From IMG/VR virus record IMGVR_UViG_3300020438_000007, positions 124,001 to 188,000 of that record: a stretch of DNA of 64,000 nt. One strand, 5' to 3'. The position numbers and the translations under genes are program-made. A model generated the notes under the pieces. That model was not told the origin of the DNA. It searched no databases and saw only the letters and a list, made by a program, of their open reading frames with translations. The number at the start of each line of letters is the position of its first letter. The first letter of the stretch is position 1. Shown here piece by piece: positions 40,334-53,370 of the stretch.

Positions 40334-40543
40334 TTAGACTGCCTTTGCTGCTTTGTTACCTGTGCCGATGCTCGCAGCGTGTGTTGCCATTCCAGCGTGC
40401 ATGAAACTGCCTTTGGGTGCTGCATTGCTCCAAGCACGCCTAGCGGCAGTGGCACCAGCGTTAGAGCGCTTGAGCACTGTATAGGTGATTACTCTGCCAG
40501 TGCTGGTCTTTAAGCGTGTCTGCTGTTTGATGTTGTTTGCCAT
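40334..40543 (-). CDS. Small basic Ala/Lys/Arg-rich protein (69 aa)
   Basis: Track ORF 40334..40591, restarted at MANNIKQ after the AC-rich leader. Confidence 0.6.
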   Translation of the reverse strand: MANNIKQQTRLKTSTGRVITYTVLKRSNAGATAARRAWSNAAPKGSFMHAGMATHAASIGTGNKAAKAV

Positions 40544-40603
40544 GTGTGCTTGTTTGTTGTTGGTCCTATTGTACATTAAAAAAGGGAGCATATCTGCCCC
40601 CTG

Positions 40604-40627
40604 TGTGCCAGTGTCTTAAGCGACTGC
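40604..40627 (-). promoter_or_regulatory. Palindromic promoter element copy 1
   Basis: TGTGCCAGT-gtctta-AGCGACTGC (+ strand); TACAAT -10 at 40568-40573 with the array's geometry; distal half degenerate. Confidence 0.65.
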
Positions 40628-40957
40628 CAGTGATACTCCGTTAACGAAATCGGATGTAGCACCAGCACTAGTCACGAACCAGGACCAGTTCTTTTGAAAG
40701 ACGCCATTCTGTCTGCCATCTGTGAACTCATTGATCAGAGCGTTTAAGCGTGATTTGGTTGTATTAGACTGCCAACCGCCATCGAAGAGGACCAGAGCAT
40801 CGTTAGTGATAGTGGCGATATGATTGCCATGTAGTTTAACTACTGCCTCCATTTGATTTGTATCAGAGTTGAAAGCATTCTCTACAGTAGTATTAGAAGA
40901 GCGGAAGTCCTGGCGTGAACGGATTGCGGTGTTCATTTGAGTTTCGATCTTACGCAT
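40616..40957 (-). CDS. Hypothetical protein (113 aa)
   Basis: MRKIE..M..AI...LHGNHIA...DGGWQSNTTKSRLNAL; preceded by a full element and leader. Confidence 0.75.
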   Translation of the reverse strand: MRKIETQMNTAIRSRQDFRSSNTTVENAFNSDTNQMEAVVKLHGNHIATITNDALVLFDGGWQSNTTKSRLNALINEFTDGRQNGVFQKNWSWFVTSAGATSDFVNGVSLAVA

Positions 40958-41020
40958 GATTGTTTGTTTGTTTGTTATGTACTTATTATAATAGCATGGC
41001 GGGTCGCTGTCAGCCAGCTC

Positions 41021-41044
41021 TGTGCCAGTTCTTCTAGTGGCACA
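41021..41044 (-). promoter_or_regulatory. Palindromic promoter element copy 2
   Basis: TGTGCCAGT-tcttct-AGTGGCACA; 7-bp gap, CTGACA-17-TATAAT, TAAC(AAAC)3 leader. Confidence 0.85.
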
Positions 41045-41062
41045 CTGAGCGCTTCTGCTTGG

Positions 41063-41090
41063 TTGACATTCTCTGGCAGTGCCCTATAAT
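41063..41090 (+). promoter_or_regulatory. Plus-strand sigma70-like promoter in non-coding DNA
   Basis: TTGACA-16-TATAAT. Confidence 0.6.
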
Positions 41091-41263
41091 GGACCTATAA
41101 GAGATTCGGGGTAGGATCTATAAACTATTCGACACTGGTGCTGCTCCGCATTAATTGTTACAGCGTGTTACGGAATACCTATGGCACACTTGACGGGCCT
41201 TGTCTACCCTTATGTTGAGCAATGTGTCTTATGTGTGGTTATGAGGATTCGGGGCATTCTCGG

Positions 41264-41292
41264 TTGACTTATGAGCGTTTCCGTGTTATAAT
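41264..41292 (+). promoter_or_regulatory. Plus-strand sigma70-like promoter in non-coding DNA
   Basis: TTGACT-17-TATAAT with extended TG. Confidence 0.65.
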
Positions 41293-41445
41293 GCCCGCTT
41301 AGATGTCTATAAGATTCACCCTTATTTCGCTTTACTTAGTGATCTCTATACAAAACAGAAGTATATTTAATTAACCTTTTTTAATGATTCTCAAATGATA
41401 CTTAAAAGAGACAATTAGACCCACTAAGTGTAGCAAACTCTCTCC

Positions 41446-41640
41446 TTATAGTTCATCATTTAGTTCATATATCTTTCTCTGAATTTGCTTTAGTTTAGCA
41501 TAGATACTTCCCTGTCTATTTGCTACTGGTAGAGCATTGTAATTAGCAAGACTTTCTAATACTAACAACTTGATAAGTGCCATTTCCTCATTATCAAATA
41601 GAGGGGCACTTAGCATGAGGTTCGCTTCTTTAAGGGTCAT
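41446..41640 (-). CDS. Hypothetical protein (~64 aa)
   Basis: Track ORF 41446..41667, restarted at MTLKEA. Confidence 0.45.
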   Translation of the reverse strand: MTLKEANLMLSAPLFDNEEMALIKLLVLESLANYNALPVANRQGSIYAKLKQIQRKIYELNDEL

Positions 41641-41776
41641 ACGATTCAACCTCGATTTCGATAGCATAGTCTGGGTAAGTTGTCTCTTCTACATTATCAT
41701 TACTATCCGCTAATCTCTGTAGAAATGCTTCACTTGATTCCCTTACAGTTTCTTCGATTGTTATTACTTTATCCAT
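41630..41776 (-). CDS. Small acidic hypothetical protein (48 aa; not in track)
   Basis: MDKVITIEETVRESSEAFLQRLADS... Confidence 0.45.
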   Translation of the reverse strand: MDKVITIEETVRESSEAFLQRLADSNDNVEETTYPDYAIEIEVESYDP

Positions 41777-41983
41777 CTAGACTGCCTCCTTAGTGTTATA
41801 CTTACTAATGGCAATTTGTCCCAGATTCTCAACATATAGAGTCTTAACTCTCTCTCCATTCTTATCATTCAACTCTAGTAGTTTGTTCCAGTTCCAGTTA
41901 CTTGGCGAAACACAGTTTGCTTCACTTACTGTAAAGTCTAATGTAACACGATAGCGAGTTACTGATTGTGATTGAGAGTCCAT
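41777..41983 (-). CDS. Hypothetical protein (68 aa)
   Basis: ORF track; promoter at 42011-42039. Confidence 0.65.
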   Translation of the reverse strand: MDSQSQSVTRYRVTLDFTVSEANCVSPSNWNWNKLLELNDKNGERVKTLYVENLGQIAISKYNTKEAV

Positions 41984-42010
41984 AAGAATGAGAGTGGTGG
42001 ATTACATTTA

Positions 42011-42039
42011 ATTCTACCAGATATTGCACTAATTGTCAA
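42011..42039 (-). promoter_or_regulatory. Sigma70-like promoter without palindrome
   Basis: TTGACA-17-TAGAAT. Confidence 0.7.
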
Positions 42040-42295
42040 CCAGTGGACGATATTTCCTCTACTACATTGTTATTTAGTGGGGAAACATTGACGATGATTG
42101 TGATTACTTAAGCACGCTTATATAAAAAAATTCGGGCGTTCGCCTCTAAGGGACTAGGAACTATGTAATACTAATAAAGACGAATTACTCTTATTAGTTT
42201 ACAACTAGTGGTCTTACTAAGTGATTAACAAACAACTCACTTATGCCACTAAGTATAGCGATTAAAGACGATTAATCACTCATTAGAACTGTCAT

Positions 42296-42430
42296 TCACC
42301 TCTTTTTCTTTTTGGACTGTTTAACCATCTTGTTAAACTTCTTTGATTGACTGGGTGACATACCACAAAAATAGTTCAGTAGATTGCCTTCATACTGGTC
42401 AGCAATGTTTGAAAGTTCGTTATCCATCAT
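42296..42430 (-). CDS. Hypothetical protein (44 aa; not in track)
   Basis: MMDNELSNIADQYEGNLLNYFCGM...KKKKR; ATGA overlap with the upstream ORF. Confidence 0.5.
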   Translation of the reverse strand: MMDNELSNIADQYEGNLLNYFCGMSPSQSKKFNKMVKQSKKKKR

Positions 42431-42591
42431 TGTGCTAAACTCTCAAAACGCTTCATCGCAAGTTTAATTGCTTCCTCATCGATTTGATCAATAGTGACGA
42501 TTTGTCCTTTATAACGATAAAAGTTTTCAATTTCTTCTAGTGACTCCTCATAAAGTGTTTCAAGTAATTCATCATTAACAGCGCAACTCAT
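42427..42591 (-). CDS. Hypothetical protein (54 aa; not in track)
   Basis: MSCAVNDELLETLYEE...AIKLAMKRFESLAQ. Confidence 0.6.
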   Translation of the reverse strand: MSCAVNDELLETLYEESLEEIENFYRYKGQIVTIDQIDEEAIKLAMKRFESLAQ

Positions 42592-42726
42592 TTAATTTTC
42601 CTCATAGATAGGGGCGAACAATTGATAGTAAAGGTCATTCATGAGACCGAATTCAAACGAAGTGGAAGCGTGCTCCTCATCAACACCTTCCCAACACTTC
42701 ATAATTTCAGTGTAAGTATCTTCCAT
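42592..42726 (-). CDS. Hypothetical protein (44 aa; not in track)
   Basis: MEDTYTEIMKCWEGVDEE...; TAATG coupling. Confidence 0.55.
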   Translation of the reverse strand: MEDTYTEIMKCWEGVDEEHASTSFEFGLMNDLYYQLFAPIYEEN

Positions 42727-42944
42727 TATAGACACTCACTAGGTGCGAAACCGATAGAAGCGATAGCATTATCAAGCGCAACTCTATCAAGATCGGGATC
42801 ATCAAAATCAACGCCTGCAGCGTGATCTACACCCCACTCGAGCACCTCATCACAAAAATCTGAGAAATCTTTGCATACCCAAGCAACATTTTCAAAGTTT
42901 TCTACTTCTTTGATTCTGTTAATTAATCTGTCTGTTTTAGTCAT
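42726..42944 (-). CDS. Hypothetical protein (72 aa)
   Basis: Track ORF restarted at MTKTDRL after the (AAAC)4 leader. Confidence 0.7.
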   Translation of the reverse strand: MTKTDRLINRIKEVENFENVAWVCKDFSDFCDEVLEWGVDHAAGVDFDDPDLDRVALDNAIASIGFAPSECL

Positions 42945-43006
42945 GTTTGTTTGTTTGTTTGTTATACTATTATTATAGGGCATTGAGATTGAATATCAAC
43001 CCCACT

Positions 43007-43030
43007 TGTGCCAGTTTGATTAGTGGCACA
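43007..43030 (-). promoter_or_regulatory. Palindromic promoter element copy 3
   Basis: TGTGCCAGT-ttgatt-AGTGGCACA; 7-bp gap, TTGATA-16-TATAAT. Confidence 0.9.
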
Positions 43031-43270
43031 CTATCGGTTGACTTTCTCCAAGTCACTTAGATAGCATTCCACTGTATGAAACTCATAGTCATTAATGTAA
43101 GTTTTAATAACAGCGTAGTCTCTACTTCTATCCAATAAAACTACATCACCTTCTAGATCATCATGTACGAGCGATTTAACACTAGTGCCTAGTTTGATGT
43201 TTGCTGTTACATCTTGACCAATTTTAAGAACATCTTTTTTACATAGTTCTTTGTATTCTTGAATTGTCAT
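43031..43270 (-). CDS. Hypothetical protein (79 aa)
   Basis: Track ORF restarted at MTIQEY (TAATG coupling). Confidence 0.65.
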   Translation of the reverse strand: MTIQEYKELCKKDVLKIGQDVTANIKLGTSVKSLVHDDLEGDVVLLDRSRDYAVIKTYINDYEFHTVECYLSDLEKVNR

Positions 43271-43431
43271 TATAGTTGATTCTCCCATACTGTTGATTTA
43301 AAACGTCTCACTGCTTTGTCTAACAGTTTAATATCACCATCGCAGATATCAGCGGCAGACTCATCCTCTACATGAGAGAATGAATTGTTGATATCACCTA
43401 TGAGAGTGAGTAATGCTTCGTAATTAGTCAT
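43270..43431 (-). CDS. Hypothetical protein (53 aa; not in track)
   Basis: MTNYEALLTLIGDINNSF...; follows an element and leader. Confidence 0.65.
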   Translation of the reverse strand: MTNYEALLTLIGDINNSFSHVEDESAADICDGDIKLLDKAVRRFKSTVWENQL

Positions 43432-43470
43432 AGTTGTTTGTTTGTTATACTACTATTATAGTCGATCGAA

Positions 43471-43743
43471 CTAGAATTTAGTCCTTGATTGTGCCACTTT
43501 AGCGATTGTCCTACTATTCATAAACTGAGCAGGTCTCTTTGTATTACATGTAACAGCATAATTCATATCAAGTAAAATATCAATTTCTTCCGCCATGTTA
43601 AACACGTTGATTGCTTCATTTTCGACTGTCTTACCTTTATAGGTAACCACCTTCAATCTAGTAAGGTTACTAACTTTATTTTGTCCATCTTTGACTTCAT
43701 AATAGTCAACAACTGTGTTTAGGTTATCAGATTGAAATTGCAT
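43471..43743 (-). CDS. Hypothetical protein (90 aa)
   Basis: ORF track; follows an element and leader; reads through element 4. Confidence 0.7.
   Translation of the reverse strand: MQFQSDNLNTVVDYYEVKDGQNKVSNLTRLKVVTYKGKTVENEAINVFNMAEEIDILLDMNYAVTCNTKRPAQFMNSRTIAKVAQSRTKF
43490..43513 (-). promoter_or_regulatory. Palindromic promoter element copy 4
   Basis: TGTGCCACT-ttagcg-ATTGTCCTA inside the upstream CDS; TATAAT and leader retained, -35 lost. Confidence 0.7.
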
Positions 43744-43803
43744 GATGTTCTTTGTTTGTTATACTATCATTATAGGGCACTGATATGCAATAACAACACT
43801 TAG

Positions 43804-43827
43804 TGTGCCACTAATCAAACTGGCACA
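43804..43827 (-). promoter_or_regulatory. Palindromic promoter element copy 5
   Basis: TGTGCCACT-aatcaa-ACTGGCACA. Confidence 0.9.
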
Positions 43828-43843
43828 CTGTTGGTTGATTATA

Positions 43844-44092
43844 TCACCAATCTGGGGTAGGTTGCTTTGCCTGTGCTTTTTCGACCTTATCATAGTATTT
43901 GTCAACTGAACCCTCTAAGATTTCAAAGATAGTATCAACTTCATTTACATAATCATCAAATGGTTCTAATAATTGACCTTTAACTCTGTCCGCTCTGTAA
44001 TGCTCACTCTTTTTAACACTATCCTCAAGTGAGCATAGGATAACACCTATTTGTGCTTCGGTTAGTGTGACTTTGTATAGTGTATTATTCAT
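43844..44092 (-). CDS. Hypothetical protein (~82 aa)
   Basis: Track ORF 43844..44116; start trimmed. Confidence 0.65.
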   Translation of the reverse strand: MNNTLYKVTLTEAQIGVILCSLEDSVKKSEHYRADRVKGQLLEPFDDYVNEVDTIFEILEGSVDKYYDKVEKAQAKQPTPDW

Positions 44093-44357
44093 GGATCCAG
44101 TTTCCTTGCTCATCATAATCTCCTTCAGTAATAGATTCTAATCCATATGGATCACTATCAATAACGACTGATTGTAAACCTTTATAATCACGTCCCTGTA
44201 AACGATAGACTTCTTTCTGTTGTCTCATATCTCGATCGAGTCTATAACATAATTCTGCATTTAGTGCCATTAATTGACGTTTATCATCACTATGTTCAGA
44301 ATAATGAAAGTTCATACACTCTAACATGTATTCAAGTTCAATAATAGTAAATTTCAT
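44085..44357 (-). CDS. Hypothetical protein (~90 aa)
   Basis: Track ORF restarted at MKFTII. Confidence 0.65.
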   Translation of the reverse strand: MKFTIIELEYMLECMNFHYSEHSDDKRQLMALNAELCYRLDRDMRQQKEVYRLQGRDYKGLQSVVIDSDPYGLESITEGDYDEQGNWIHE

Positions 44358-44358
44358 T

Positions 44359-44535
44359 TTAGTAGTCTCCTCCATATATTTCTTCCATCAACTCATCATA
44401 AAGTTTCTTTAGTTTAGTTGCTGTAATACTCTTTGCTTTATCATTAATTTTCTCTTCTGTCTTATCATCAAAATTCTTAGCAAGATCTTTGATCTCTTTG
44501 ATGTAATAACGACAGTCTGATCTTGTTATGGTCAT
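44359..44535 (-). CDS. Hypothetical protein (58 aa; not in track)
   Basis: MTITRSDCRYYIKEIKDLAKNF...; follows an element and leader. Confidence 0.65.
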   Translation of the reverse strand: MTITRSDCRYYIKEIKDLAKNFDDKTEEKINDKAKSITATKLKKLYDELMEEIYGGDY

Positions 44536-44595
44536 AGATTTGTTTGTTTGTTATACTACTATTATAGTAGCATGAGATTCAATAACAACCACGAC

Positions 44596-44619
44596 TATGC
44601 CAGTAATTAAACTGGCACA
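44596..44619 (-). promoter_or_regulatory. Palindromic promoter element copy 6
   Basis: TATGCCAGT-aattaa-ACTGGCACA. Confidence 0.85.
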
Positions 44620-44777
44620 TCATAGGTTGATTTATTTTTAAGAACATGCCAATATTCTTCATAAGATAGAGTTTCTTCTTTATCTGTATCGGTATTGAGT
44701 ACAATATCAAAAGGATAAAAAGCATAATATCTCATATGATCATCAACATACTCTTTGATTTGTTTATACTTAGTCAT
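44607..44777 (-). CDS. Hypothetical protein (56 aa)
   Basis: Track ORF restarted at MTKYKQ; last codons (VPV*) are encoded by element 6. Confidence 0.6.
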   Translation of the reverse strand: MTKYKQIKEYVDDHMRYYAFYPFDIVLNTDTDKEETLSYEEYWHVLKNKSTYDVPV

Positions 44778-45003
44778 CAGAACACCCCTTGATAACGCTT
44801 TGTATAGTATCGGTAAAATCCTCATCAAAGAATTCTTCGATCTCTACCATAGCATCATTAAATGAATGGTCATCTATCCATTTTTGCATATCTTGAGCAA
44901 CATATACAACTAAATCCTCGACTGACATTCCATCAACGACTCGATCGATATAACGCTCTTTAAGAGCATTGAATTGTTTGTCTGTTAGTTTTGTTTTGTT
45001 CAT
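44770..45003 (-). CDS. Hypothetical protein (77 aa)
   Basis: Track ORF restarted at MNKTKL. Confidence 0.65.
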   Translation of the reverse strand: MNKTKLTDKQFNALKERYIDRVVDGMSVEDLVVYVAQDMQKWIDDHSFNDAMVEIEEFFDEDFTDTIQSVIKGCSDD

Positions 45004-45007
45004 AGTG

Positions 45008-45211
45008 TTAATCATGGATGATAGAATCAAAAATTGTGTCATCATTAGGGAACTCATTTACCTTAGCAATTGCTGCTGCGGCAACCATGTTCCAGACCTT
45101 TTGTCCTGACATTTTCTGATCTTGACAATGGAAAGCAACTGTATCCTCTAAGAGTTCAAGCACTTCCATTGACTCATTAAAGAGTTTTTCGTATTCTACA
45201 GGGTTCATCAT
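45008..45211 (-). CDS. Hypothetical protein (67 aa)
   Basis: ORF track. Confidence 0.65.
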   Translation of the reverse strand: MMNPVEYEKLFNESMEVLELLEDTVAFHCQDQKMSGQKVWNMVAAAAIAKVNEFPNDDTIFDSIIHD

Positions 45212-45441
45212 ACAGTCCTCACGAATAGTTTTGAAATGCGATCGTCAATTTCATTGACTCTCTCATAAACTGATCTGCCTTCGATCAATTCATCTTCTTG
45301 CATACTGTCATCATCATAACAACGATAATCTTCAAGTGCATTTGAGATAGTGTCCCATTCTCCATCAGTGAAGAATGAGCGAATTGTTTGCAGTTGGTCA
45401 AAAGAGAAGTCTCTAACCAGTGATCCTTGACGATTCATCAT
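45208..45441 (-). CDS. Hypothetical protein (77 aa)
   Basis: ORF track; follows an element and leader. Confidence 0.7.
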   Translation of the reverse strand: MMNRQGSLVRDFSFDQLQTIRSFFTDGEWDTISNALEDYRCYDDDSMQEDELIEGRSVYERVNEIDDRISKLFVRTV

Positions 45442-45502
45442 AAAGTTTGTTTGTTTGTTATGTACTTATTATAGGGCAGTGACTCAAAGAATCAACCACC
45501 CT

Positions 45503-45526
45503 TGTGCCAGTTTGTCTACTGGTCTA
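45503..45526 (-). promoter_or_regulatory. Palindromic promoter element copy 7
   Basis: TGTGCCAGT-ttgtct-ACTGGTCTA. Confidence 0.85.
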
Positions 45527-45818
45527 ATGCCCATAGACTTCCACCATCAAAATCGGTAGGGTATCCATAGTTTCTAACTAACATATCTCTAACTCTTTCT
45601 CTGTCAAGTGAATCACCATCGCCCCAAGTGAATCTATCATTATCCAAATCAGATATCACTTGTAAGTAATCTTCCGTAGCAAGTGTAATGTCACCTTTAG
45701 TAACATTCATTTGATAAAGTGCATCATCAGCACCATAGAATGAAAAGACATAATCAATAAACTCATCAAGTTGATTGATGTCATATTTTGATTTTCCGAT
45801 AGCAACGATAGAAGTCAT
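45516..45818 (-). CDS. Hypothetical protein (100 aa)
   Basis: ORF track; 'FIDYVFSFYG...W..GDS.DRERVRDM' motif. Confidence 0.7.
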   Translation of the reverse strand: MTSIVAIGKSKYDINQLDEFIDYVFSFYGADDALYQMNVTKGDITLATEDYLQVISDLDNDRFTWGDGDSLDRERVRDMLVRNYGYPTDFDGGSLWALDQ

Positions 45819-45878
45819 AAACCTGTTTGTTTGTTATACTATCATTATAGGGCAGTGATATTGAATATCAACCGCCCT

Positions 45879-45902
45879 TGTGCCACTTATTCAACTGTCA
45901 CT
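45879..45902 (-). promoter_or_regulatory. Palindromic promoter element copy 8
   Basis: TGTGCCACT-tattca-ACTGTCACT. Confidence 0.85.
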
Positions 45903-46085
45903 AGGTACAACCATTTGTGGGATTCCATCTTGAATATCCGCTAAGTGTCCTAGTTTATGACGAATTTTCCTAAAATTAACGTCAAAATCATCGCTCAACT
46001 TGTCAGTAACCCTACAAGGCGTACCTAAGATAAGTTGAAGCAGAGCGTCACACTCTGCTGCGGTTAGATTTGGGTCATTCATCAT
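45891..46085 (-). CDS. Hypothetical protein (64 aa)
   Basis: ORF track. Confidence 0.6.
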   Translation of the reverse strand: MMNDPNLTAAECDALLQLILGTPCRVTDKLSDDFDVNFRKIRHKLGHLADIQDGIPQMVVPSDS

Positions 46086-46564
46086 GCTACCTCGTATAAT
46101 TCTTTTGGATAATCAGCAGGGATAGTTTCTTTGATAGGTTTGAATGTATCGTTGAAATCTTTAGTCTCTTTGTTCCAAAAACTGAGACCATAACACTCTA
46201 GAGTTCCGTCAAGTTCCTTGACGTAAGCATACTCTCCACAACACTTGTCAGTATCCTCAAAGAAGTGAGAGATAGTTTTGTGAAGTTTAGGAGCATTATC
46301 ATCCATAGACTCACCTCGCTCTGTATAATAGCAAGGTTTGTACTCTCTACCTTCTAACTCTTCGGGTTCCTTAAGATCCCAACCTGAGTTAGTATAGCAA
46401 CAACTCATGTTACCACCATCAATAAGTTCAGCGAATTGGTCTCTAGTATCATAGTGCTTGTTGAGAGTAACTCCCAACCACTGTGGATAACCATCCCAGT
46501 GATGATATACTGAAAGGATTGAACCATCAGCAAGGCGAAGTCCGATTCTTGAATTTGTTGACAT
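46082..46564 (-). CDS. Phage protein with HWDGYP motif (160 aa)
   Basis: MSTNSRIG...SVYHHWDGYP..LG..L..HY motif, recurrent in phages; function unknown. Confidence 0.75.
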   Translation of the reverse strand: MSTNSRIGLRLADGSILSVYHHWDGYPQWLGVTLNKHYDTRDQFAELIDGGNMSCCYTNSGWDLKEPEELEGREYKPCYYTERGESMDDNAPKLHKTISHFFEDTDKCCGEYAYVKELDGTLECYGLSFWNKETKDFNDTFKPIKETIPADYPKELYEVA

Positions 46565-46626
46565 AGTGTGTTGTTTGTTTGTTATGTACTTATTATAGTG
46601 TGGTGGGAATGGAAATCAACCACCTG

Positions 46627-46650
46627 TGTGCCACTAATCTAAGTGTCACA
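46627..46650 (-). promoter_or_regulatory. Palindromic promoter element copy 9
   Basis: TGTGCCACT-aatcta-AGTGTCACA. Confidence 0.9.
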
Positions 46651-46903: not shown

Positions 46904-46928
46904 TTAGTCCTCCTTTTTGTTTGTGTGG

Positions 46929-47497: not shown

Positions 47498-47709
47498 AGG
47501 TCAATAGTATGCTCAAGTTTTAGACGTAATAGTGAGTCAACAACCGATTCCATAGTTGTCTTAGAGTAACCAACTGCATAGGGATAATCCTTCTTGTAGT
47601 CAGCGGCACTCTGTTCCGAAGCACCATAACATACCTCAATTGATTCATTGAGTGACATAATTATTGCATCAATAACGTAGGTCGGGATTTCAAGTTTGGG
47701 ATCTGGCAT
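47494..47709 (-). CDS. Hypothetical protein (71 aa)
   Basis: ORF track; follows element 10. Confidence 0.65.
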   Translation of the reverse strand: MPDPKLEIPTYVIDAIIMSLNESIEVCYGASEQSAADYKKDYPYAVGYSKTTMESVVDSLLRLKLEHTIDL

Positions 47710-47765
47710 TGAATTACCTTATATGTTTATATTATAGTATAATAAAATAGGATTGCAACCACTCA

Positions 47766-47789
47766 TGTGACATTTATTCAACTGGCACA
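47766..47789 (-). promoter_or_regulatory. Palindromic promoter element copy 10
   Basis: TGTGACATT-tattca-ACTGGCACA; 7-bp gap, TTGCAA-16-TATAAT. Confidence 0.85.
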
Positions 47790-47802
47790 CCCGATGAAGT
47801 GA

Positions 47803-48774
47803 TTAAGAGTTGGTAATCACTTCATCTGGTACGCCCCATGTCTTTTTCATGTTAAAGTTTGCATAACTGAAGCGTTGACGTTTGACAAGTTTGTATGTAC
47901 CATATTTGTTAGTCATCACATAACCCTCATGTTCATAGGGTTGACCATCAATAAGACACTCTACATCTTGTGACGTAGTGATGCCTTGCATCAATAGTTC
48001 TTTAACTTCGATAATCATATTGTACAAGTGGAATAGGTTTTTTGAATATCCTGTATCACTTGCAAGTTGATCTGGGTTAAGTTTCTTGCCTTCCCTCACA
48101 TAACTGTTGACGATTACCTTTAGTGTTTTCCCTTCCTTGAGCGTGGGGAACTCGGTGAATCGTACCAACGTGCGAATAAGAATGAGCAAAAATTCGATCT
48201 TTGCATTTAAGCGGTTTGATCGGGCGCCCATACTAGCATGAGTATCAACTTGATAGTGTCTCAAGTTGGTACAGTCGAGATTCCCATAGTTATTAGTCCT
48301 ATAATGGAATACTGCATCTAATTCTTGAATAGTTGCACCAACATATTCAGTATGAGTCGCTACAACCACTGATTGTTTGATTACTTTATCAAATTTGTAG
48401 GTGATTGTGTTAGGTTTGTAAGTATCATTACCACCATAACCAATGAAGTCGCACTGATATACCCCATGCTCTGTGGGCAGGGTCTCAAGACAAGTGTGTA
48501 GAATACTTGCTACGTTTGGGATGTTCCCATGATTAGTTTCAATGTCATCATGAGTATAGTTTATCTTGATCTTTTTCTTATTGAATACTGATTTAGTACC
48601 AACAAAGAATCTACCATTCTCAGGGTTGACTCCATAGACGACAGCGGGGGCACCATCATATTTGACTGATATTTGATTTCTCTTGCTCTTCAGAAACTTG
48701 ATCACATCAACAGCACCCTCCTTACCAAGGGTCAGGATGCTGTCCTCTGGGTGTTCTAGGTGTTTGTTCTTCAT
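47803..48774 (-). CDS. Ligase-like nucleotidyltransferase-fold protein (DUF6267-like, 323 aa)
   Basis: Motif I KxDG (SVKYDGAP), motif IV (HEGYV), motif V (YKLVK); N-terminal KHLEHPED. Confidence 0.7.
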   Translation of the reverse strand: MKNKHLEHPEDSILTLGKEGAVDVIKFLKSKRNQISVKYDGAPAVVYGVNPENGRFFVGTKSVFNKKKIKINYTHDDIETNHGNIPNVASILHTCLETLPTEHGVYQCDFIGYGGNDTYKPNTITYKFDKVIKQSVVVATHTEYVGATIQELDAVFHYRTNNYGNLDCTNLRHYQVDTHASMGARSNRLNAKIEFLLILIRTLVRFTEFPTLKEGKTLKVIVNSYVREGKKLNPDQLASDTGYSKNLFHLYNMIIEVKELLMQGITTSQDVECLIDGQPYEHEGYVMTNKYGTYKLVKRQRFSYANFNMKKTWGVPDEVITNS

Positions 48775-48815
48775 ACTACCATTATACACCATGCCAACAG
48801 GAAAACAACCCTCTC

Positions 48816-48839
48816 TGTACCAGTTTGTAGACTGTCACA
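48816..48839 (-). promoter_or_regulatory. Palindromic promoter element copy 11
   Basis: TGTACCAGT-ttgtag-ACTGTCACA; 7-bp gap, TTGTTT-16-TATAAT. Confidence 0.85.
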
Positions 48840-49143
48840 CAAAGAATTGTTCTAGTGGGGTCAAGTTAAGTTTCATTGCAGTATAGGGCGAAGTGTCCTC
48901 TATTGAGACTTCTTTACCTATTCTATTTGAATTGATGGGGGCGTAGTAAGCGTGCGTACTGCTTCTCTTTGTTCTCTTATGCTTGACGAATCCCCAGATA
49001 CAACGAGATTCATCACCATCATTATAGAGAAACCTATAGTCAGATACAGTCCAGATAGCATCCACATTAGTTTTAAATTGTATCGACTCATAGCGGTATC
49101 CTTTAGGTGGTTGGTGAATAAAATCGTCTGGAAGTGCGGTCAC
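48835..49143 (-). CDS. Hypothetical protein (102 aa)
   Basis: ORF track. Confidence 0.7.
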   Translation of the reverse strand: MTALPDDFIHQPPKGYRYESIQFKTNVDAIWTVSDYRFLYNDGDESRCIWGFVKHKRTKRSSTHAYYAPINSNRIGKEVSIEDTSPYTAMKLNLTPLEQFFV

Positions 49144-49159
49144 AATTTATCAGTTAAAA

Positions 49160-49225
49160 GATTGTGGGAGAGATTCGACTTAAAGAGCATTTTCCACTGG
49201 GGTCGCTCACTCTTGCCTCCCACAT
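49160..49225 (-). ncRNA. Candidate small structured RNA or structured leader (RNA A)
   Basis: Starts at the predicted TSS of element 12; 8-bp closing stem UGUGGGAG/CUCCCACA, inner stem AAGAGU/GCUCUU, possible CGAC/GUCG pseudoknot. Confidence 0.45.
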
Positions 49226-49264
49226 TTATATAATAATCCATTGGGATAGGATTACAACCAGTAG

Positions 49265-49288
49265 TGTGCCAGTTTATTATATGTCACA
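49265..49288 (-). promoter_or_regulatory. Palindromic promoter element copy 12
   Basis: TGTGCCAGT-ttatta-TATGTCACA; 7-bp gap, TTGTAA-16-TATTAT. Confidence 0.8.
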
Positions 49289-49468: not shown

Positions 49469-49469
49469 C

Positions 49470-50081
49470 TTACCTCATAGGTATGTTAAATGACATGATT
49501 GTCCTCTGTTTATCTGATTTAGATACTGGCGATTCATGTAACAATACAGAGGGGAAAGTTAGAATCTCACCTTCATTTACTGAAGGCGCAACCTTATCTA
49601 TTGTACCATAAAAAGGGTTAGGATTAGGACTATAAAATGTAGTGGGAAAGTGCTCTTCTGCATCAAATTCAACATATAATACACATGATATATTCATTAA
49701 ACCATGATTGTGGGCACCATGATATTGTCCTCTGTCATATCTCTGTGACCATAGTTGCCAATCCTCAATACCTTTGAAAGGGCAATCTCCTCTATATCTA
49801 TCATTCAATATCTGTGTGTATTCATTAACTAACCTATCTAAATCAGTTTCCAATATCTCATAAAACTCCATAAGATATGGTGCTGAAGTCTGATACTTAT
49901 AGTAATCAGTCTGGCACTCATAATCTTGTTTAAAGTAATCAAACTCTTGAAGATCATCACCAGTAAAATCCATTAGATTTAAGAGTTTAGATTTCTTGTC
50001 ACTCCAATCATCTACCACAAACTTAGTGATAGGGAACCCAAATAGATTTAGAGATTGACCGTTCATTTCTTGTGATTTCAT
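49470..50081 (-). CDS. Putative 2OG-Fe(II) oxygenase (HxH type, 203 aa)
   Basis: AHNHG..ISCVLYV...TFPSVLLHES...RTIMSFN. Confidence 0.8.
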   Translation of the reverse strand: MKSQEMNGQSLNLFGFPITKFVVDDWSDKKSKLLNLMDFTGDDLQEFDYFKQDYECQTDYYKYQTSAPYLMEFYEILETDLDRLVNEYTQILNDRYRGDCPFKGIEDWQLWSQRYDRGQYHGAHNHGLMNISCVLYVEFDAEEHFPTTFYSPNPNPFYGTIDKVAPSVNEGEILTFPSVLLHESPVSKSDKQRTIMSFNIPMR

Positions 50082-50211
50082 TTTCTGTCTTGAGAACCCT
50101 TGCCACCACTAGACCAAAGACCTGTTTTTTCCATAATTCTGTCCGTCAGGTGTGTTTGGTCATCCATCCCACTCTCGTTATGGAAAAAAGACTAAGTGTC
50201 ATCCTAGAAGT

Positions 50212-50382
50212 TCATTTGTGCTTATAGTTCTTTCTTGATTTGCGCCTTGGTTTTATACCCTTGTCTCTCTTCAACTCTGCTTTAAGTTTCTTTAGAAATT
50301 TCAAGTGATCAGGATACACCAATCTCATCAGATCCTTTTTAGTCTGTCTCGATTCTTTACTAATCTCTGTCCACCTCAACAT
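50212..50382 (-). CDS. Small basic protein (56 aa; not in track)
   Basis: MLRWTEIS...YPDHLKFLKKLKAELKRDKG... Confidence 0.5.
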   Translation of the reverse strand: MLRWTEISKESRQTKKDLMRLVYPDHLKFLKKLKAELKRDKGIKPRRKSRKNYKHK

Positions 50383-50626
50383 CATTTATGTCCTGAAATG
50401 TAATGTTTGCGATGTCCGAATCAGTCCAATCTGTGATATCATCAAGGAATAAGTCGGTATCATCAAAATCATCTGCCTCGATCATCATTTCCTGTACTAA
50501 TGCCTCAGCGTCCTCAAGTCGAACTTTATCCACCAAACTACTCATCTGTGTGGCGAATTGCTCTTCCATGACTGAAAGGCATTGTGCTCTGATCTTGTCA
50601 ATTTGTGCCATTGGTTTAATTACCAT
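50360..50626 (-). CDS. Acidic hypothetical protein (88 aa)
   Basis: ORF track; TTGCAA-17-TATAAT promoter at 50635-50663. Confidence 0.65.
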   Translation of the reverse strand: MVIKPMAQIDKIRAQCLSVMEEQFATQMSSLVDKVRLEDAEALVQEMMIEADDFDDTDLFLDDITDWTDSDIANITFQDINDVEVDRD

Positions 50627-50663
50627 GTAGTTTAATTATACTATAATGTTAAGTTATTTGCAA

Positions 50664-51896
50664 CTACCTTGTCGCTCTTGATACCTGTGACTCTCCTCTA
50701 GTAAAGATAGTGTCAACAACTGATTGAAGGCGACGTTCTGTACCAATACCCACATTGCTGTAAACTGGTACAAACATCTTGCCAAATGGTTTTACATAAC
50801 CATTTCCATTGATGTTAGGTTTGAGAGCACCTGTACTAATCTTAAGTGCATCTTCCTTATGTAGTCGAATGACTCGACCAATAGTCTGTGCCATGGTGAT
50901 TAGATCAAGATTCCTCAATAGAATACAAGCAGTCAATCCGCTCACATTCATACCCTCTGAGAGAATAGAATGATGAAACATGACAAACTTCTTGTCAGGG
51001 TCAGCACCCCACTTGTTCATCAAATTGAAGAATGTCTTGCGAGTGACCTTCTTACCATTGATGATAGCACCATACTTTGATGTAATCCACATTACATTGT
51101 ATTTCATAGAGTGACATACTGCCATGAAATCAGTTTGAGTAATCAACTTGTGAATGTTCTTACTAGACTTAGCAGTGACCAATACTTTGTCCATGTGATC
51201 TTCATTTTCAAGAGCATCAAGAATCATACACCTGTCAATCTGCTCGACTGATTCATAGAACCCGATAGGATACTTGACTGACTTGACTTGAGGCGGTACA
51301 ATGTAACCCTTTTCAATCAACTCTGGAGCAGCGACTTCTGCAATAACATTACCATACACCTTGACATTGTTCATACCTCTCTCTTGTGATGTATGATGTT
51401 TAGGTGTGGCAGTGAAGTAAAACTTACGTCTGGTAATCTTAGAGCGATTCTTGACACTCTCAAAGAAGTTCCTTTGAACTGAATTGTGTGCCTCATCATA
51501 ATATACTGTGTCTGCTTCAACATCTTCTCTGACTTTGTGAAGTGAGTGATATGTTGTAAAGATCAACTGGTTCCTTGTACTGTTATGATGCCACTCTTGA
51601 ATCTCTTCTGGGTTAGTAGTAGTCTTATAGTTAGTCTCTCCACTATGAACATGAAGCACCTCGACATTATCAATGTGCTCTAAGAACTCCTCACACAACT
51701 GTTGTGCAAGTAAGATTCTAGGAGCAACAACAATAATAGTCTGCGGAATAGGCATACTGAATCGCCACTTAGCGTCCATAATCATACATATTGTTTTACC
51801 GCCACCTGTGGGTACAAGAACCTGCCCCCACTTGTGTTGCATGGTATCAATTATGTCTGTTTGATGGTCACGAAGTTGCATAGTCAGTTGTCTCAA
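50664..51896 (-). CDS. Superfamily 2 DEAH-box helicase (410 aa)
   Basis: Q motif LRDHQ, Walker A PTGGGKT, DEAH, motif III TAT, motif V ILSEG, motif VI QTIGRVIR. Confidence 0.9.
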   Translation of the reverse strand: MRQLTMQLRDHQTDIIDTMQHKWGQVLVPTGGGKTICMIMDAKWRFSMPIPQTIIVVAPRILLAQQLCEEFLEHIDNVEVLHVHSGETNYKTTTNPEEIQEWHHNSTRNQLIFTTYHSLHKVREDVEADTVYYDEAHNSVQRNFFESVKNRSKITRRKFYFTATPKHHTSQERGMNNVKVYGNVIAEVAAPELIEKGYIVPPQVKSVKYPIGFYESVEQIDRCMILDALENEDHMDKVLVTAKSSKNIHKLITQTDFMAVCHSMKYNVMWITSKYGAIINGKKVTRKTFFNLMNKWGADPDKKFVMFHHSILSEGMNVSGLTACILLRNLDLITMAQTIGRVIRLHKEDALKISTGALKPNINGNGYVKPFGKMFVPVYSNVGIGTERRLQSVVDTIFTRGESQVSRATR

Positions 51897-51913
51897 TACT
51901 CATATTATAGGAT

Positions 51914-51939
51914 AAAAAAAGACCCCTGCATGGGGTCTT
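51914..51939 (-). terminator. Intrinsic terminator superimposed on the -35 region of element 13
   Basis: Minus strand AAGACCCC-ATGCA-GGGGTCTT with a T-run. Confidence 0.7.
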
Positions 51940-51962
51940 GTGACAGTTTCAGAACTGTGCCA
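51939..51962 (-). promoter_or_regulatory. Palindromic promoter element copy 13
   Basis: TGTGACAGT-ttcaga-ACTGTGCCA; TATAAT at 51904-51909. Confidence 0.75.
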
Positions 51963-52134
51963 ATAGTTTTTGAGTCTCAGGATCGAACTCCTCTTTGACT
52001 CCATTGATGTCCATCAACCAATCATCTGCCTCAAGTCGTTCAAACTCTTCGGTTCCAAGTGTCCATTCGGGATCGCCCGAGAACATTTGGGCATTTTCTT
52101 CAAACTCTTGTGGGGTCATTGTCTTAATAATCAA
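51949..52134 (-). CDS. Hypothetical protein (61 aa)
   Basis: ORF track. Confidence 0.6.
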   Translation of the reverse strand: MIIKTMTPQEFEENAQMFSGDPEWTLGTEEFERLEADDWLMDINGVKEEFDPETQKLLAQF

Positions 52135-52164
52135 AATTTACAAAAAATAATAAACACATCAAAC

Positions 52165-52398
52165 TCAGCAACTTGCAGGCGAGTATTGTTGTGGTTCAGT
52201 CAGGAAATCTGTCACCTGATAACCAAGATCGAGACGTGAATTGATTGTCTCAGTCATTTCTCTCTTGCTCATCAGTCGCATTGACATAGCATTAACTTCG
52301 CCTTGATTGTTCTTCAGTTTGAGAGTATAAACGAATTTCTCAGTCAAAATGTTGTGAGGGCGGAACTCTACTGACATTGAACCTGATGTGAGTTGCAT
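52165..52398 (-). CDS. Hypothetical protein (77 aa)
   Basis: ORF track; follows element 14. Confidence 0.7.
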   Translation of the reverse strand: MQLTSGSMSVEFRPHNILTEKFVYTLKLKNNQGEVNAMSMRLMSKREMTETINSRLDLGYQVTDFLTEPQQYSPASC

Positions 52399-52457
52399 GG
52401 GGTCTCTTGTGTTTACTCTCTTATTATAATGGGATCAGAGTCCCCTGCAACCACCTG

Positions 52458-52481
52458 TGTGCCAGTTATCCAACTGGTGGT
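52458..52481 (-). promoter_or_regulatory. Palindromic promoter element copy 14
   Basis: TGTGCCAGT-tatcca-ACTGGTGGT; 7-bp gap, TTGCAG-16-TATAAT. Confidence 0.8.
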
Positions 52482-52765
52482 GTGCCTGGTGCCTGAGCAG
52501 GCATTGATTCCATATCAAACTTACTAGATGCCTTCTCTAGTTCTACCTTACCCTTGAGGGCATTGACCTCTGCAATAAGAGTCTTAATATCATCTTGTTG
52601 TTTATACAAGGCAGCATTAACCAATGACTCCAATGTAGTCAATCTCTCATCAAGATTACCAATGGTTCGCATTGATGCTTGTAATTGTTTCTTTAGTCTA
52701 TCTACTTGTTGCAACTTAGTTTTAGTAAGTGCTTCTGTGTCTGATGTTAGTGAATCGTATCCCAT
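52466..52765 (-). CDS. Coiled-coil hypothetical protein (99 aa)
   Basis: ORF track; heptad pattern; CTAAATA late promoter at 52786-52792. Confidence 0.7.
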   Translation of the reverse strand: MGYDSLTSDTEALTKTKLQQVDRLKKQLQASMRTIGNLDERLTTLESLVNAALYKQQDDIKTLIAEVNALKGKVELEKASSKFDMESMPAQAPGTPPVG

Positions 52766-52805
52766 AATTTATGTTACTCTTTGATTATTTAGATAGGTGT
52801 GCGTA

Positions 52806-53231
52806 TTACCTGATGTACAGATAACCACCTGCCCAGTCACAGTTTGATAGCATCCACTGACGTTGATTGATGTCTCTCATATCAAATCTAACGTGTTTAG
52901 CAGGTGCTTTCCATGAAGCAGGTTTGTAAACCTCTCCTGTCATTTTGTCAACAAAAGCATGAACCCCTGCACTATCATATTTGCCTTGGTGGTAGTCATT
53001 CTGAATGATCTTATGATACCTTTTGCCTGATGTTATAGTAAACCTCATGCACTCTTCATCATTCTCAATTTTGTTAATCCTATCCTGTAGGTATGGATTA
53101 TTTTCCTCTGAATTATTCTTGATGCAAGAGCGAACTGCGTAGTTCTTATACTGTTGTTCGAGAGCACGGCAAAGTGTCTCTGTCCATTGAAGTACTTCTA
53201 CTTTTGTGAGTGATTGTTCTAGTGTTGACAT
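52806..53231 (-). CDS. Hypothetical protein (141 aa)
   Basis: 'GKRYHKI...VHAFVDK.TGEVYKPASWKAPAKHVRF' motif. Confidence 0.75.
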   Translation of the reverse strand: MSTLEQSLTKVEVLQWTETLCRALEQQYKNYAVRSCIKNNSEENNPYLQDRINKIENDEECMRFTITSGKRYHKIIQNDYHQGKYDSAGVHAFVDKMTGEVYKPASWKAPAKHVRFDMRDINQRQWMLSNCDWAGGYLYIR

Positions 53232-53258
53232 AATCTTTGTTTGTATTGTTGTTTGTTA

Positions 53259-53305
53259 AAGAGAAAAGGGGGGAAAGGTAACAAACACAAAACCTTTCCC
53301 TCCAC
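53259..53305 (-). terminator. Terminator-like hairpin directly after the element-15 TSS (RNA C)
   Basis: GGGAAAGGT-TTTGTGTTTGTT-ACCTTTCCC followed by CCCTTTTCTCTTT. Confidence 0.6.
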
Positions 53306-53346
53306 ATTCATATATTACTGCTTTATGGTGGTAATACAACCACCTA

Positions 53347-53370
53347 TGTGCCACTACTTCAACTGTCCAC
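53347..53370 (-). promoter_or_regulatory. Palindromic promoter element copy 15
   Basis: TGTGCCACT-acttca-ACTGTCCAC; 7-bp gap, TTGTAT-16-TAATAT. Confidence 0.8.

What the first reader, a model, noticed from the sequence alone, without database searches (positions are those of the whole stretch)
40541..53370. Array of 15 palindrome-promoter-leader units partitioning ~40 genes into cassette-like modules
Seen: a 24-bp imperfect inverted repeat TGTG(C/A)CA(G/C)T-N6-A(C/G)TG(G/T)CACA recurs at 40604, 41021, 43007, 43490, 43804, 44596, 45503, 45879, 46627, 47766, 48816, 49265, 51939, 52458 and 53347. In every copy measured it sits 7 bp upstream of a -35 position and 29-30 bp upstream of a TAnnnT -10 box on the minus strand, even where the -35 is poor (copies 1, 4, 13). 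Mismatches between halves are not compensatory (G/G, C/C), which favours a dimeric protein binding dsDNA over a hairpin. Established (from memory, verify): a palindromic early-promoter element was reported for cyanophages Syn9 and P-TIM40 (Doron et al. 2016), and repeated early promoter cassettes (PeSL) were linked to gene shuffling in RB49-type phages (Arbiol et al. 2010). Inference: this is a synchronous immediate-early regulon and possibly an integron-like platform for gaining and losing 1-5 gene modules. The binding factor is not identified here.
Basis: partly seen in the sequence, partly recalled or inferred. Interest (0 to 1): 0.85.

Follow-up and report, generated by a model that had tools for sequence, protein, structure and literature searches.

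The report
Cyanophage early-promoter array with dyad element
A marine cyanobacterial virus carries 15 near-identical promoter units in a row, each with a 24-bp symmetric protein-binding site set at a fixed distance upstream; this promoter type seems already described for related phages, and the repeats also act as recombination joints for small genes.

Summary
All 15 copies exist at the stated coordinates, all point along the minus strand, and no other copy occurs in the 64-kb window. Each unit has a 24-bp dyad, then 29-30 nt to a TATAAT box, usually a GTTG -35-like motif 6 nt after the dyad, and a short CA-rich leader without a Shine-Dalgarno site. The window is an uncultured S-SSM7-like T4-type cyanomyovirus (Kyanoviridae).

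S-SSM7 has 20 such units in the syntenic region and only 2 elsewhere in 233 kb. Syn9 carries the same element upstream of several genes. This looks like the cyanomyovirus early-gene regulatory element attributed to Doron et al. 2016, which I could not read.

Across 130 distinct dyads the two variable arm positions do not covary, and 7 of 15 hairpins fold no better than shuffles. This favours a double-stranded DNA site over a hairpin. Fixed spacing, a near-invariant promoter-proximal half-site, and units where a terminator replaces the -35 favour a factor that recruits RNA polymerase. That factor is unidentified.

The integron idea is not supported. Recombination between units is shown by hybrid units in relatives, but synteny breakpoints overall are about as common at element-free gene junctions. 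Verdict: a new member of a known kind, moderate interest.

The parts
53229..53370 (-). Unit 1: dyad 53347-53370, -35-like 53334-53339, -10 TAATAT 53312-53317. A 74-nt leader with a hairpin and T-run leads to the ATG at 53231 (DUF7717 gene).
52396..52481 (-). Unit 2: half-dyad 52458-52481 (proximal half intact), GTTG -35-like, -10 TATAAT 52423-52428, ATG 52398 (phrog_500 gene).
51879..51962 (-). Unit 3: dyad 51939-51962. An intrinsic terminator hairpin and T-run (about 51912-51939) occupy the -35 position. -10 TATAAT 51904-51909, ATG 51881 (helicase).
49141..49288 (-). Unit 4: dyad 49265-49288, -10 TATTAT 49230-49235. A roughly 80-nt leader leads to the GTG at 49143 (phrog_573 gene; this one-gene module is absent from S-SSM7).
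48772..48839 (-). Unit 5: dyad 48816-48839, -10 TATAAT 48781-48786. An in-frame ATG at 48774 lies 6 nt after the -10 (DUF6267 gene), so the mRNA may be leaderless.
47707..47789 (-). Unit 6: dyad 47766-47789, -35 TTGCAA, -10 TATAAT 47731-47736, ATG 47709.
46562..46650 (-). Unit 7: dyad 46627-46650, -10 46592-46597, ACAAAC-repeat leader, ATG 46564.
45816..45902 (-). Unit 8: dyad 45879-45902, -35 TTGATA, -10 45844-45849, ACAAAC leader, ATG 45818.
45439..45526 (-). Unit 9: dyad 45503-45526, -10 45468-45473, ACAAAC leader, ATG 45441.
44533..44619 (-). Unit 10: dyad 44596-44619 with a mirrored CAAC 6 nt upstream (44-bp symmetry), -10 44561-44566, ATG 44535.
43741..43827 (-). Unit 11: dyad 43804-43827 with a mirrored CAAC upstream, -10 43769-43774, ATG 43743 (phrog_500 paralogue).
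43429..43513 (-). Unit 12: dyad 43490-43513 (degenerate distal half), no -35 match, -10 43455-43460, ATG 43431.
42942..43030 (-). Unit 13: dyad 43007-43030 with a mirrored CAAC upstream, -35 TTGATA, -10 42972-42977, 27-nt ACAAAC leader, ATG 42944.
40955..41044 (-). Unit 14: dyad 41021-41044, gap of 30 nt, -10 40985-40990, ATG 40957 (Kyano_Gp96 family gene).
40541..40627 (-). Unit 15: half-dyad 40604-40627. A terminator hairpin 40583-40602 and T-run occupy the -35 position. -10 TACAAT 40568-40573, ATG 40543.

Best explanation
This is the early-gene region of a T4-type cyanomyovirus of the S-SSM7 lineage. Each of the 15 units is a promoter read by host RNA polymerase. It has a consensus -10 box, a weak -35 (usually only GTTG), and a 24-bp dyad-symmetric element at about -65 to -42. 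A short CA-rich leader without a Shine-Dalgarno site follows, then the first gene of a 1-7-gene group of small proteins of unknown function.

Inferred mechanism: a dimeric DNA-binding factor sits on the dyad. The factor could be host-encoded or delivered with the virion. It contacts RNA polymerase through the promoter-proximal half-site and so makes up for, or replaces, -35 recognition. All units would then respond to the same factor.

Shown: the units share 60-90 bp of similar sequence, and ordinary homologous recombination between them has deleted, inserted and re-partnered gene groups in related phages.

Inferred: the activator role, the early timing and the identity of the factor.
For: - **Chance and extent.** Enrichment over chance and the limits of the array are clear.
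- **Spacing.** Among 204 distinct units from the window and 80 related loci, the dyad-to-(-10) gap is 29 nt in 115 and 30 nt in 55.
- **Asymmetry.** The proximal half A-S-T-G-G/T-C-A-C-A is 96-100% conserved except for the two degenerate positions (S, and G 77% / T 22%). The outer distal bases are only 53-73% conserved.
- **No hairpin signal.** Arm pair 5/20 pairs at 0.45 against 0.43 expected, and pair 8/17 at 0.33 against 0.39. Hairpin energies range from -1.9 to -15.2 kcal/mol, and 7 of 15 have z above -1.
- **-35 is dispensable.** The helicase unit in all relatives keeps the dyad and the spacing while a covarying GC hairpin and T-run fill the -35 position.
- **Lineage.** The window is 85% identical to S-SSM7 over the conserved half of the region.
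- **Distribution.** S-SSM7 has 20 units at 38.0-51.8 kb and only 2 elsewhere. Syn9 has the element upstream of gp4, gp55, gp63, gp68, gp73 and gp75. BLAST hits to a unit fall only in cyanomyoviruses of Synechococcus and Prochlorococcus.
- **Gene content.** The genes are small ORFans or DUFs, as expected for early host-takeover genes.
- **Recombination.** 20 loci have a hybrid joining the flank and dyad of the 52458 unit to the terminator, -10 and leader of the 51939 unit. This removes the two-gene group between them.
- **Further hybrids.** Others are 49265-up/48816-down in L025-L027, and two in L061.
Against: - No transcription start sites or expression data exist for this phage.
- The key paper (Doron et al. 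2016) could not be read. The link to its 'novel early regulatory element' rests on my memory of its abstract plus finding the motif in Syn9.
- A dyad centred near -53.5 is not a classical class I or class II activator position.
- No DNA-binding protein was identified among the module genes.
- A repressor role cannot be excluded from sequence alone.
Confidence: 0.62

Rival explanations
1. The dyad is an operator for a repressor, for example a phage early protein. The repressor would shut all early promoters off together at the early-to-middle switch rather than activate them.
For: The site is palindromic and operator-like and is shared by every unit. T4-type cyanophages lack MotA and AsiA (stated in PMC5780444), so some other switch is needed. 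Most units in this phage have a usable GTTG/TTGnnn -35 and a consensus -10, and could fire without help.
Against: The site lies upstream of the core promoter (-65 to -42), not over it. The spacing to the -10 is fixed to within 1 nt. Units with no -35 at all keep the dyad. The half-site next to the polymerase is the more conserved one. No DNA-binding domain was found in the module proteins.
Confidence: 0.2
2. The inverted repeat acts as an RNA or single-stranded DNA hairpin. It could be a terminator, a processing site or a 3'-end stabiliser for the upstream gene group, like the stem-loop of PeSL cassettes.
For: It sits at or just after the stop codon of the upstream gene. Some copies fold well, at -13 to -15 kcal/mol. 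PeSLs combine a stem-loop with an early promoter (PMC2839356).
Against: No covariation appears at the variable arm positions in 130 distinct copies. 7 of 15 copies fold no better than shuffles. No U-tract follows. Where termination is evidently needed, a separate covarying GC hairpin with a T-run follows the dyad. The distal arm is often degenerate while the proximal arm is invariant.
Confidence: 0.06
3. The units are sites of a dedicated, site-specific cassette system. In this integron-like or mini-circle model, the units are where 1-5-gene modules are excised and inserted.
For: Hybrid units have junctions at the dyad core. Whole groups are present or absent between neighbouring units. The same gene sits behind different units in different phages. 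In the union test, 12 of 15 element junctions and 10 of 22 other junctions carry a breakpoint (p = 0.047).
Against: No integrase or recombinase is annotated in the complete S-SSM7 genome. Single comparisons show no enrichment (p 0.19-0.73). Many indels lie at element-free junctions inside groups. The hybrids are what homologous recombination between 60-90-bp repeats would produce. The union p-value is inflated by uneven coverage and wider intergenic zones.
Confidence: 0.1
4. The conserved TGGCAC followed by TTG marks a sigma-54-type -24/-12 promoter.
For: TGGCAC is the sigma-54 -24 consensus, and a TTG follows downstream.
Against: TTG starts 3 nt further from GG than sigma-54 requires, and it is TTGA/TTGT rather than TTGC. 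A consensus TATAAT sits at the spacing expected for a sigma-70-type promoter. Cyanobacteria are known to lack rpoN (established knowledge).
Confidence: 0.01

Closest known systems
Early-gene regulatory element of T4-like cyanophages (Syn9, P-TIM40; Doron et al. 2016, ISME J 10:1437)
   Same: The phage family and the syntenic gene region are the same. The dyad, -10 box and spacing are found upstream of Syn9 gp55, gp63, gp68, gp73 and gp75. The element is widespread in Kyanoviridae.
   Different: I could not read the paper, so I cannot say which of these details it reports: the 29/30-nt spacing, the asymmetry, the replacement of the -35 by a terminator, or the 44-bp symmetric form. Syn9 half-sites are looser (often GTGTCCAC), and Syn9 leaders differ from the ACAAAC-repeat leader seen here.
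PeSL cassettes (promoter-early stem-loop) of RB49/phi1, T4/PST and KVP40/nt-1 (Arbiol 2010, PMC2839356; Comeau 2014, PMC4122927)
   Same: Both are dense repeats of an early sigma-70-type promoter with an inverted repeat, set between small ORFan genes in a variable region. Recombination between copies creates indels and re-partnered genes (for PeSLs; here).
   Different: The PeSL stem-loop is a GC-rich, effective terminator. Here the inverted repeat is not selected as a hairpin, has no U-tract and sits at a fixed promoter position. Only 2 of 15 units carry a real terminator. PeSL papers do not treat cyanophages, and Puxty 2015 (PMC4503421) found no dense PeSLs in S-PM2.
Activator-dependent promoters (CRP/NtcA class I and II; T4 MotA box with sigma appropriation)
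   Same: A sequence element at fixed distance upstream of a good -10 stands in for a weak or absent -35.
   Different: The dyad differs from CRP (TGTGA-N6-TCACA) and NtcA (GTA-N8-TAC) sites in sequence and width. Its centre is near -53.5. No MotA or AsiA homologue is known in these phages. The factor is unknown.
Integron attC arrays
   Same: Repeated imperfect palindromes separate short gene groups that all point the same way.
   Different: There is no integrase. Sequence rather than folded structure is conserved. Each unit is a promoter, whereas integron cassettes are mostly promoterless.

Membership tests
Cyanomyovirus early-promoter element (as attributed to Doron et al. 2016) | Occurs in T4-like cyanophages, upstream of genes in the early region | tested here: met
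   The window is S-SSM7-like. The units lie in the region syntenic to Syn9 gp55-gp93.
Cyanomyovirus early-promoter element (as attributed to Doron et al. 2016) | The same motif is present in Syn9 | tested here: met
   A dyad with a -10 at matching spacing lies upstream of Syn9 gp4, gp55, gp63, gp68, gp73 and gp75.
Cyanomyovirus early-promoter element (as attributed to Doron et al. 2016) | Mapped transcription starts and early expression kinetics | not testable with these tools
   No transcript data are available, and the paper is not held.
PeSL (promoter-early stem-loop) | Sigma-70-type early promoter with -35 and -10 | tested here: met
   Every unit has a -10 box (consensus TATAAT in 11 of 15; 53347, 49265 and 40604 have variants). 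12 of 15 have a TTGnnn or GTTG -35-like motif.
PeSL (promoter-early stem-loop) | Stem-loop that is an effective terminator in each cassette | tested here: not met
   Only units 51939 and 40604 have a GC hairpin with a T-run. The dyad shows no covariation and folds inconsistently.
PeSL (promoter-early stem-loop) | Recombination between copies produces indels or shuffling | tested here: met
   Hybrid units occur in 20 loci (52458/51939), in L025-L027 (49265/48816) and in L061.
PeSL (promoter-early stem-loop) | Excised mini-circles | not testable with these tools
   This needs outward PCR on infected cultures.
Integron | Integrase gene adjacent to the array | tested here: not met
   No integrase or recombinase is annotated in S-SSM7. 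No such Pfam hit appears among 30 of the ~38 module proteins scanned.
Integron | attC sites conserved in folded structure rather than sequence | tested here: not met
   Sequence is conserved and pairing is not.
Sigma-54 promoter | GG and GC elements at exact -24/-12 spacing | tested here: not met
   TTG lies 3 nt too far away and no TTGC is present.

The most novel reading that the evidence does not exclude
The dyad may be the operator of a still unknown factor that replaces -35 recognition at cyanomyovirus early promoters. That would be a functional counterpart of T4 sigma appropriation in phages lacking MotA and AsiA. Its full form would be a 44-bp symmetric site (CAAC-N6-dyad-N6-GTTG) able to position polymerase on either side. 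The same repeated units would serve as the cyanophage equivalent of PeSL recombination joints that move early genes between phages.
Probability: 0.3. Interest if true: 0.65.

Novelty: new member of a known kind. Interest (0 to 1): 0.4.

Why it matters
T4-type cyanophages are among the most abundant viruses in the sea, and how they start their gene expression programme is only partly understood. This array gives a clean, testable definition of the early promoter:
- an exact spacing between the dyad and the -10 box;
- the identity of the half-site that matters most;
- natural variants that lack a -35.

It also shows that the repeated promoters are places where small host-takeover genes are swapped between related phages. 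Identifying the protein that binds the dyad would explain how infection is launched across this virus family. The promoter type itself seems to have been described already, so this is a refinement, not a discovery.

Tried and rejected
- **Doron et al. 2016.** The paper is not held under its DOI or PMC id. Citing papers give no motif details.
- **Host regulon test.** Hits were mostly Acidobacteriota palindromes of the TGTGACA type, with no common neighbouring gene family. The Nostocales hits lie next to unrelated genes. The only marine Synechococcus hit is a 194-kb contig that is itself a cyanophage. The test is therefore uninformative.
- **Phage-encoded binding protein.** Pfam and PHROGs scans of module proteins found only DUFs and unknowns. 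A PDB sequence search of the Kyano_Gp96-family protein found nothing. Two S-SSM7 genes annotated as regulator or DNA-binding gave no usable domain.
- **Structure prediction.** I considered it for the phrog_500 paralogues and dropped it, because only 7 distinct homologues were available.
- **RNA genes.** Rfam and tRNA scans of the window were empty.
- **Sigma-54 reading.** Rejected on spacing.
- **Bidirectional promoters.** The mirrored CAAC is real, but a matching antisense -10 is not conserved in the window copies.
- **Tandem duplication of units 49265 and 48816.** Alignment shows similarity only in the promoter part.
- **False positive.** An apparent extra element before the gene after the helicase in L042 was a matrix false positive.


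Full report

With up to three mismatches it matches 13 times, against 0.31 expected. All 13 hits are at listed coordinates. The remaining two listed copies (40604 and 52458) keep the promoter-proximal half and the inner part of the distal half.

A weight matrix built from the 15 copies separates them from everything else in the 64 kb. They score 17.8-31.7 bits on the minus strand, and the next best site scores 13.9 bits. Other occurrences of TGGCACA have no promoter context. All units point along the minus strand, as do the genes.

The gap from the last base of the dyad to the -10 hexamer is 29 nt in 13 units and 30 nt in 2. About 38 minus-strand ORFs fall into 15 groups of 1-7 genes.

**2. 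What the sequence is**

The region is 85% identical to Synechococcus phage S-SSM7 (Kyanoviridae) over the conserved half. It is 100% identical to a 231-kb IMG/VR contig. So this is an uncultured S-SSM7-like T4-type cyanomyovirus.

The module proteins are almost all of unknown function: DUF7717, DUF6267, DUF7326, the Kyano_Gp96 family and PHROG unknowns. The exceptions are a helicase and a 2OG-Fe(II) oxygenase. That content is typical of early host-takeover regions.

**3. Anatomy of a unit**

Reading the minus strand, each unit has these parts in order:
- a dyad, tgtG-M-CA-s-TT, five A/T-rich bases, A-S-TG-K-CACA;
- six bases, then GTTG (a TTGnnn -35-like hexamer with a 16-17-nt spacer);
- a TATAAT box;
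- about 7 nt to the presumed start;
- a 15-27-nt leader, in ten units rich in ACAAAC repeats and lacking a Shine-Dalgarno sequence;
- the start codon.

With the -10 at -12 to -7, the dyad spans about -65 to -42.

I collected 204-223 distinct units from the window, S-SSM7, Syn9 and 80 related IMG/VR loci. Their properties are:
- The gap to the -10 is 29 nt in 115 units and 30 nt in 55.
- GTTG lies exactly 6 nt after the dyad in 109 units.
- A mirrored CAAC lies exactly 6 nt before the dyad in 38 units, far above any other offset. This gives a 44-bp symmetric form, which four window copies show.
- The promoter-proximal half is 96-100% conserved apart from the two degenerate positions (S, and G 77% / T 22%). 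The four outer bases of the distal half are conserved in only 53-73% of units. The matrix used to collect units contributes part of this asymmetry.

**4. Hairpin or protein site?**

In 130 distinct dyads, the two variable arm pairs show no covariation. Pair 5/20 is complementary in 45% of copies against 43% expected from column frequencies. Pair 8/17 is complementary in 33% against 39% expected.

Folded as RNA, the 15 window copies range from -1.9 to -15.2 kcal/mol, and seven fold no better than shuffled sequence. No U-tract follows the dyad.

Where a terminator is evidently wanted, a separate GC hairpin with a T-run follows the dyad. This applies to units 51939 and 40604. The stem of that hairpin does covary among relatives.

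The dyad is therefore read as double-stranded DNA.

**5. Likely mechanism**

Four features point to a factor bound at the dyad that positions or recruits RNA polymerase:
- The spacing to the -10 is fixed to within 1 nt.
- The half-site next to the polymerase is the better conserved one.
- The central spacer is A/T-rich.
- The helicase unit keeps the dyad at the same distance in every relative examined (72-100% helicase identity), while a terminator hairpin replaces the -35.

A pure repressor operator would more likely overlap the core promoter and tolerate variable spacing, but it cannot be excluded.

A sigma-54 reading fails because the TTG is 3 nt too far from the GG, and because cyanobacteria lack sigma-54.

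The factor is not identified. No DNA-binding domain was found in the module proteins.

**6. Distribution**

A scan of the complete S-SSM7 genome finds 20 units at 38.0-51.8 kb, the syntenic region. It finds just two more, upstream of a peptidase gene and of cobS, and none elsewhere in 233 kb.

Syn9 carries the same dyad and -10 arrangement upstream of gp4 (the gp32 homologue), gp55, gp63, gp68, gp73 and gp75. Its half-sites are looser and its leaders differ.

A BLAST search of one unit against 50,697 phage records hits only cyanomyoviruses of Synechococcus and Prochlorococcus.

This fits my recollection of the abstract of Doron et al. 2016. As I recall it, a novel regulatory element controls early-gene transcription in Syn9 and P-TIM40, and that element is conserved among T4-like cyanophages. 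I could not read the paper. Sullivan et al. 2010, who published the S-SSM7 genome, predicted only generic sigma-70, late, Pho and NtcA promoters.

**7. Cassette idea**

Gene-token maps of the window, S-SSM7 and several IMG/VR relatives show a conserved scaffold of units, with frequent gene gain, loss and replacement.

I tested whether synteny breakpoints prefer element-bearing junctions. There are 15 such junctions in the window and 22 element-free gene junctions. No single comparison is significant:

| Comparator | Element junctions hit | Other junctions hit | p |
|---|---|---|---|
| S-SSM7 | 7/15 | 8/22 | 0.73 |
| L009 | 7/15 | 8/22 | 0.73 |
| L030 | 9/15 | 8/22 | 0.19 |
| L042 | 7/15 | 6/22 | 0.30 |
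| L028 | 4/15 | 3/22 | 0.41 |
| Union of all five | 12/15 | 10/22 | 0.047 |

The union figure is inflated for two reasons. Seven element-free junctions are covered by only one comparator, and element junctions are much wider targets. At gene-junction resolution, then, breakpoints are close to random with respect to the elements.

Recombination between units is nevertheless directly visible:
- In 20 loci, a single hybrid unit joins the upstream gene end and dyad of the 52458 unit to the terminator, -10, leader and helicase gene of the 51939 unit. The junction is at the end of the shared CACA core. The two-gene group between the units is removed.
- L025-L027 have a 49265-upstream/48816-downstream hybrid that lacks the one-gene group. 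S-SSM7 keeps both units with nothing between them.
- In L061, homologues of the genes that follow units 43490 and 45503 in the window sit behind other units.
- A subfamily of units shares even the -35/-10 spacer sequence, with 12-14 of 16 positions identical. This suggests spread by duplication or gene conversion.

These events are what homologous recombination between 60-90-bp repeats produces, as proposed for PeSLs.

Three things argue against an integron-like system:
- S-SSM7 has no annotated integrase.
- The elements are conserved in sequence, not in structure.
- Only two units carry terminators, so the groups are not insulated cassettes.

**8. Comparison and novelty**

The thing works like an activator-dependent early promoter and, for genome evolution, partly like a PeSL. 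It is not a PeSL by structure, because the inverted repeat is not a terminator. It is not an integron.

It appears to be a member of the early-promoter class already reported for T4-like cyanophages. This analysis adds several things:
- the exact geometry of the unit;
- the asymmetry between half-sites;
- the natural variants without a -35;
- the 44-bp symmetric form;
- the near-exclusive clustering in one genome region;
- concrete inter-unit recombination events in cyanophages.

I rate it a new member of a known kind, with moderate interest.

Noticed in passing
window 41045-41445 (plus strand): A 400-bp stretch has no ORF of 35 aa or more. It holds two consensus sigma-70 promoters that point opposite to the array (TTGACA-16-TATAAT at 41063-41090; TTGACT-17-TATAAT at 41264-41292). 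Both promoters and about 130 nt downstream of the first are conserved in S-SSM7, where the second promoter has its own dyad. These are candidate small RNAs. There is no Rfam match.
   Followed up: partly
window 50069-50210: This 142-bp segment is absent from S-SSM7, L009 and L010 at this position. Its core (50089-50198) is 94-96% identical to an intergenic stretch downstream of the helicase in Syn33, S-RIM12, S-CAM8 and ACG-2014g, which belong to other genera. It is either a recently exchanged piece or a very conserved non-coding element. There is no Rfam match.
   Followed up: partly
window 53250-53305 (minus strand): The leader of unit 53347 contains a GGGAAAGG/CCTTTCCC hairpin followed by a T-rich run, before the DUF7717 gene. 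S-SSM7 has the same hairpin with a matched one-base deletion in both arms. It may be an attenuator or a short RNA.
   Followed up: partly
window 48772-48786 (minus strand): In unit 48816, an in-frame ATG of the DUF6267 gene lies 6 nt after the TATAAT box, so this mRNA may be leaderless. The arrangement is the same in S-SSM7.
   Followed up: no
window 53646-53674 and 54610-54639 (minus strand): Two perfect 12/12 sigma-70 consensus promoters lie in the 2OG-Fe(II) oxygenase cluster just upstream of the array and have no dyad. The second is conserved in S-SSM7, L009 and L030. A plain promoter without a dyad also precedes the gene after the helicase (50635-50663).
   Followed up: partly
L093, L095, L142 (genome-contig hits): Three contigs each carry several complete dyad-promoter units. 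They are filed under a Synechococcus MAG (194 kb), a Nonlabens xiamenensis isolate assembly (188 kb) and a Flavobacteriales MAG (64 kb). L093 also encodes homologues of window genes. They look like cyanomyovirus contigs that were mis-binned or co-sequenced.
   Followed up: partly
L084-L203 (genome-contig hits): Palindromes of the form TGTGACA-S-T, six bases, A-S-TGTCACA are far more common in bacterial genomes than chance predicts, especially in Acidobacteriota. The spacer often resembles TTCGAA. 51 of 125 lie inside long ORFs, and no common neighbouring gene family was found. No link to the phage element is shown.
   Followed up: partly
window 52165-52398 and 43471-43743 (minus strand): Two paralogous small genes (phrog_500, T4-GC 81) are each the first gene behind a unit. 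The Syn9 gene gp73, also preceded by the element, begins with the same first codons as 52165-52398, but homology was not tested.
   Followed up: partly
window units 40604-46650: Ten units share a leader rich in ACAAAC repeats and lacking a Shine-Dalgarno sequence. Syn9 units use a different shared leader (ATAAGAGTCAAAG type). Leader families therefore appear to be lineage-specific.
   Followed up: partly
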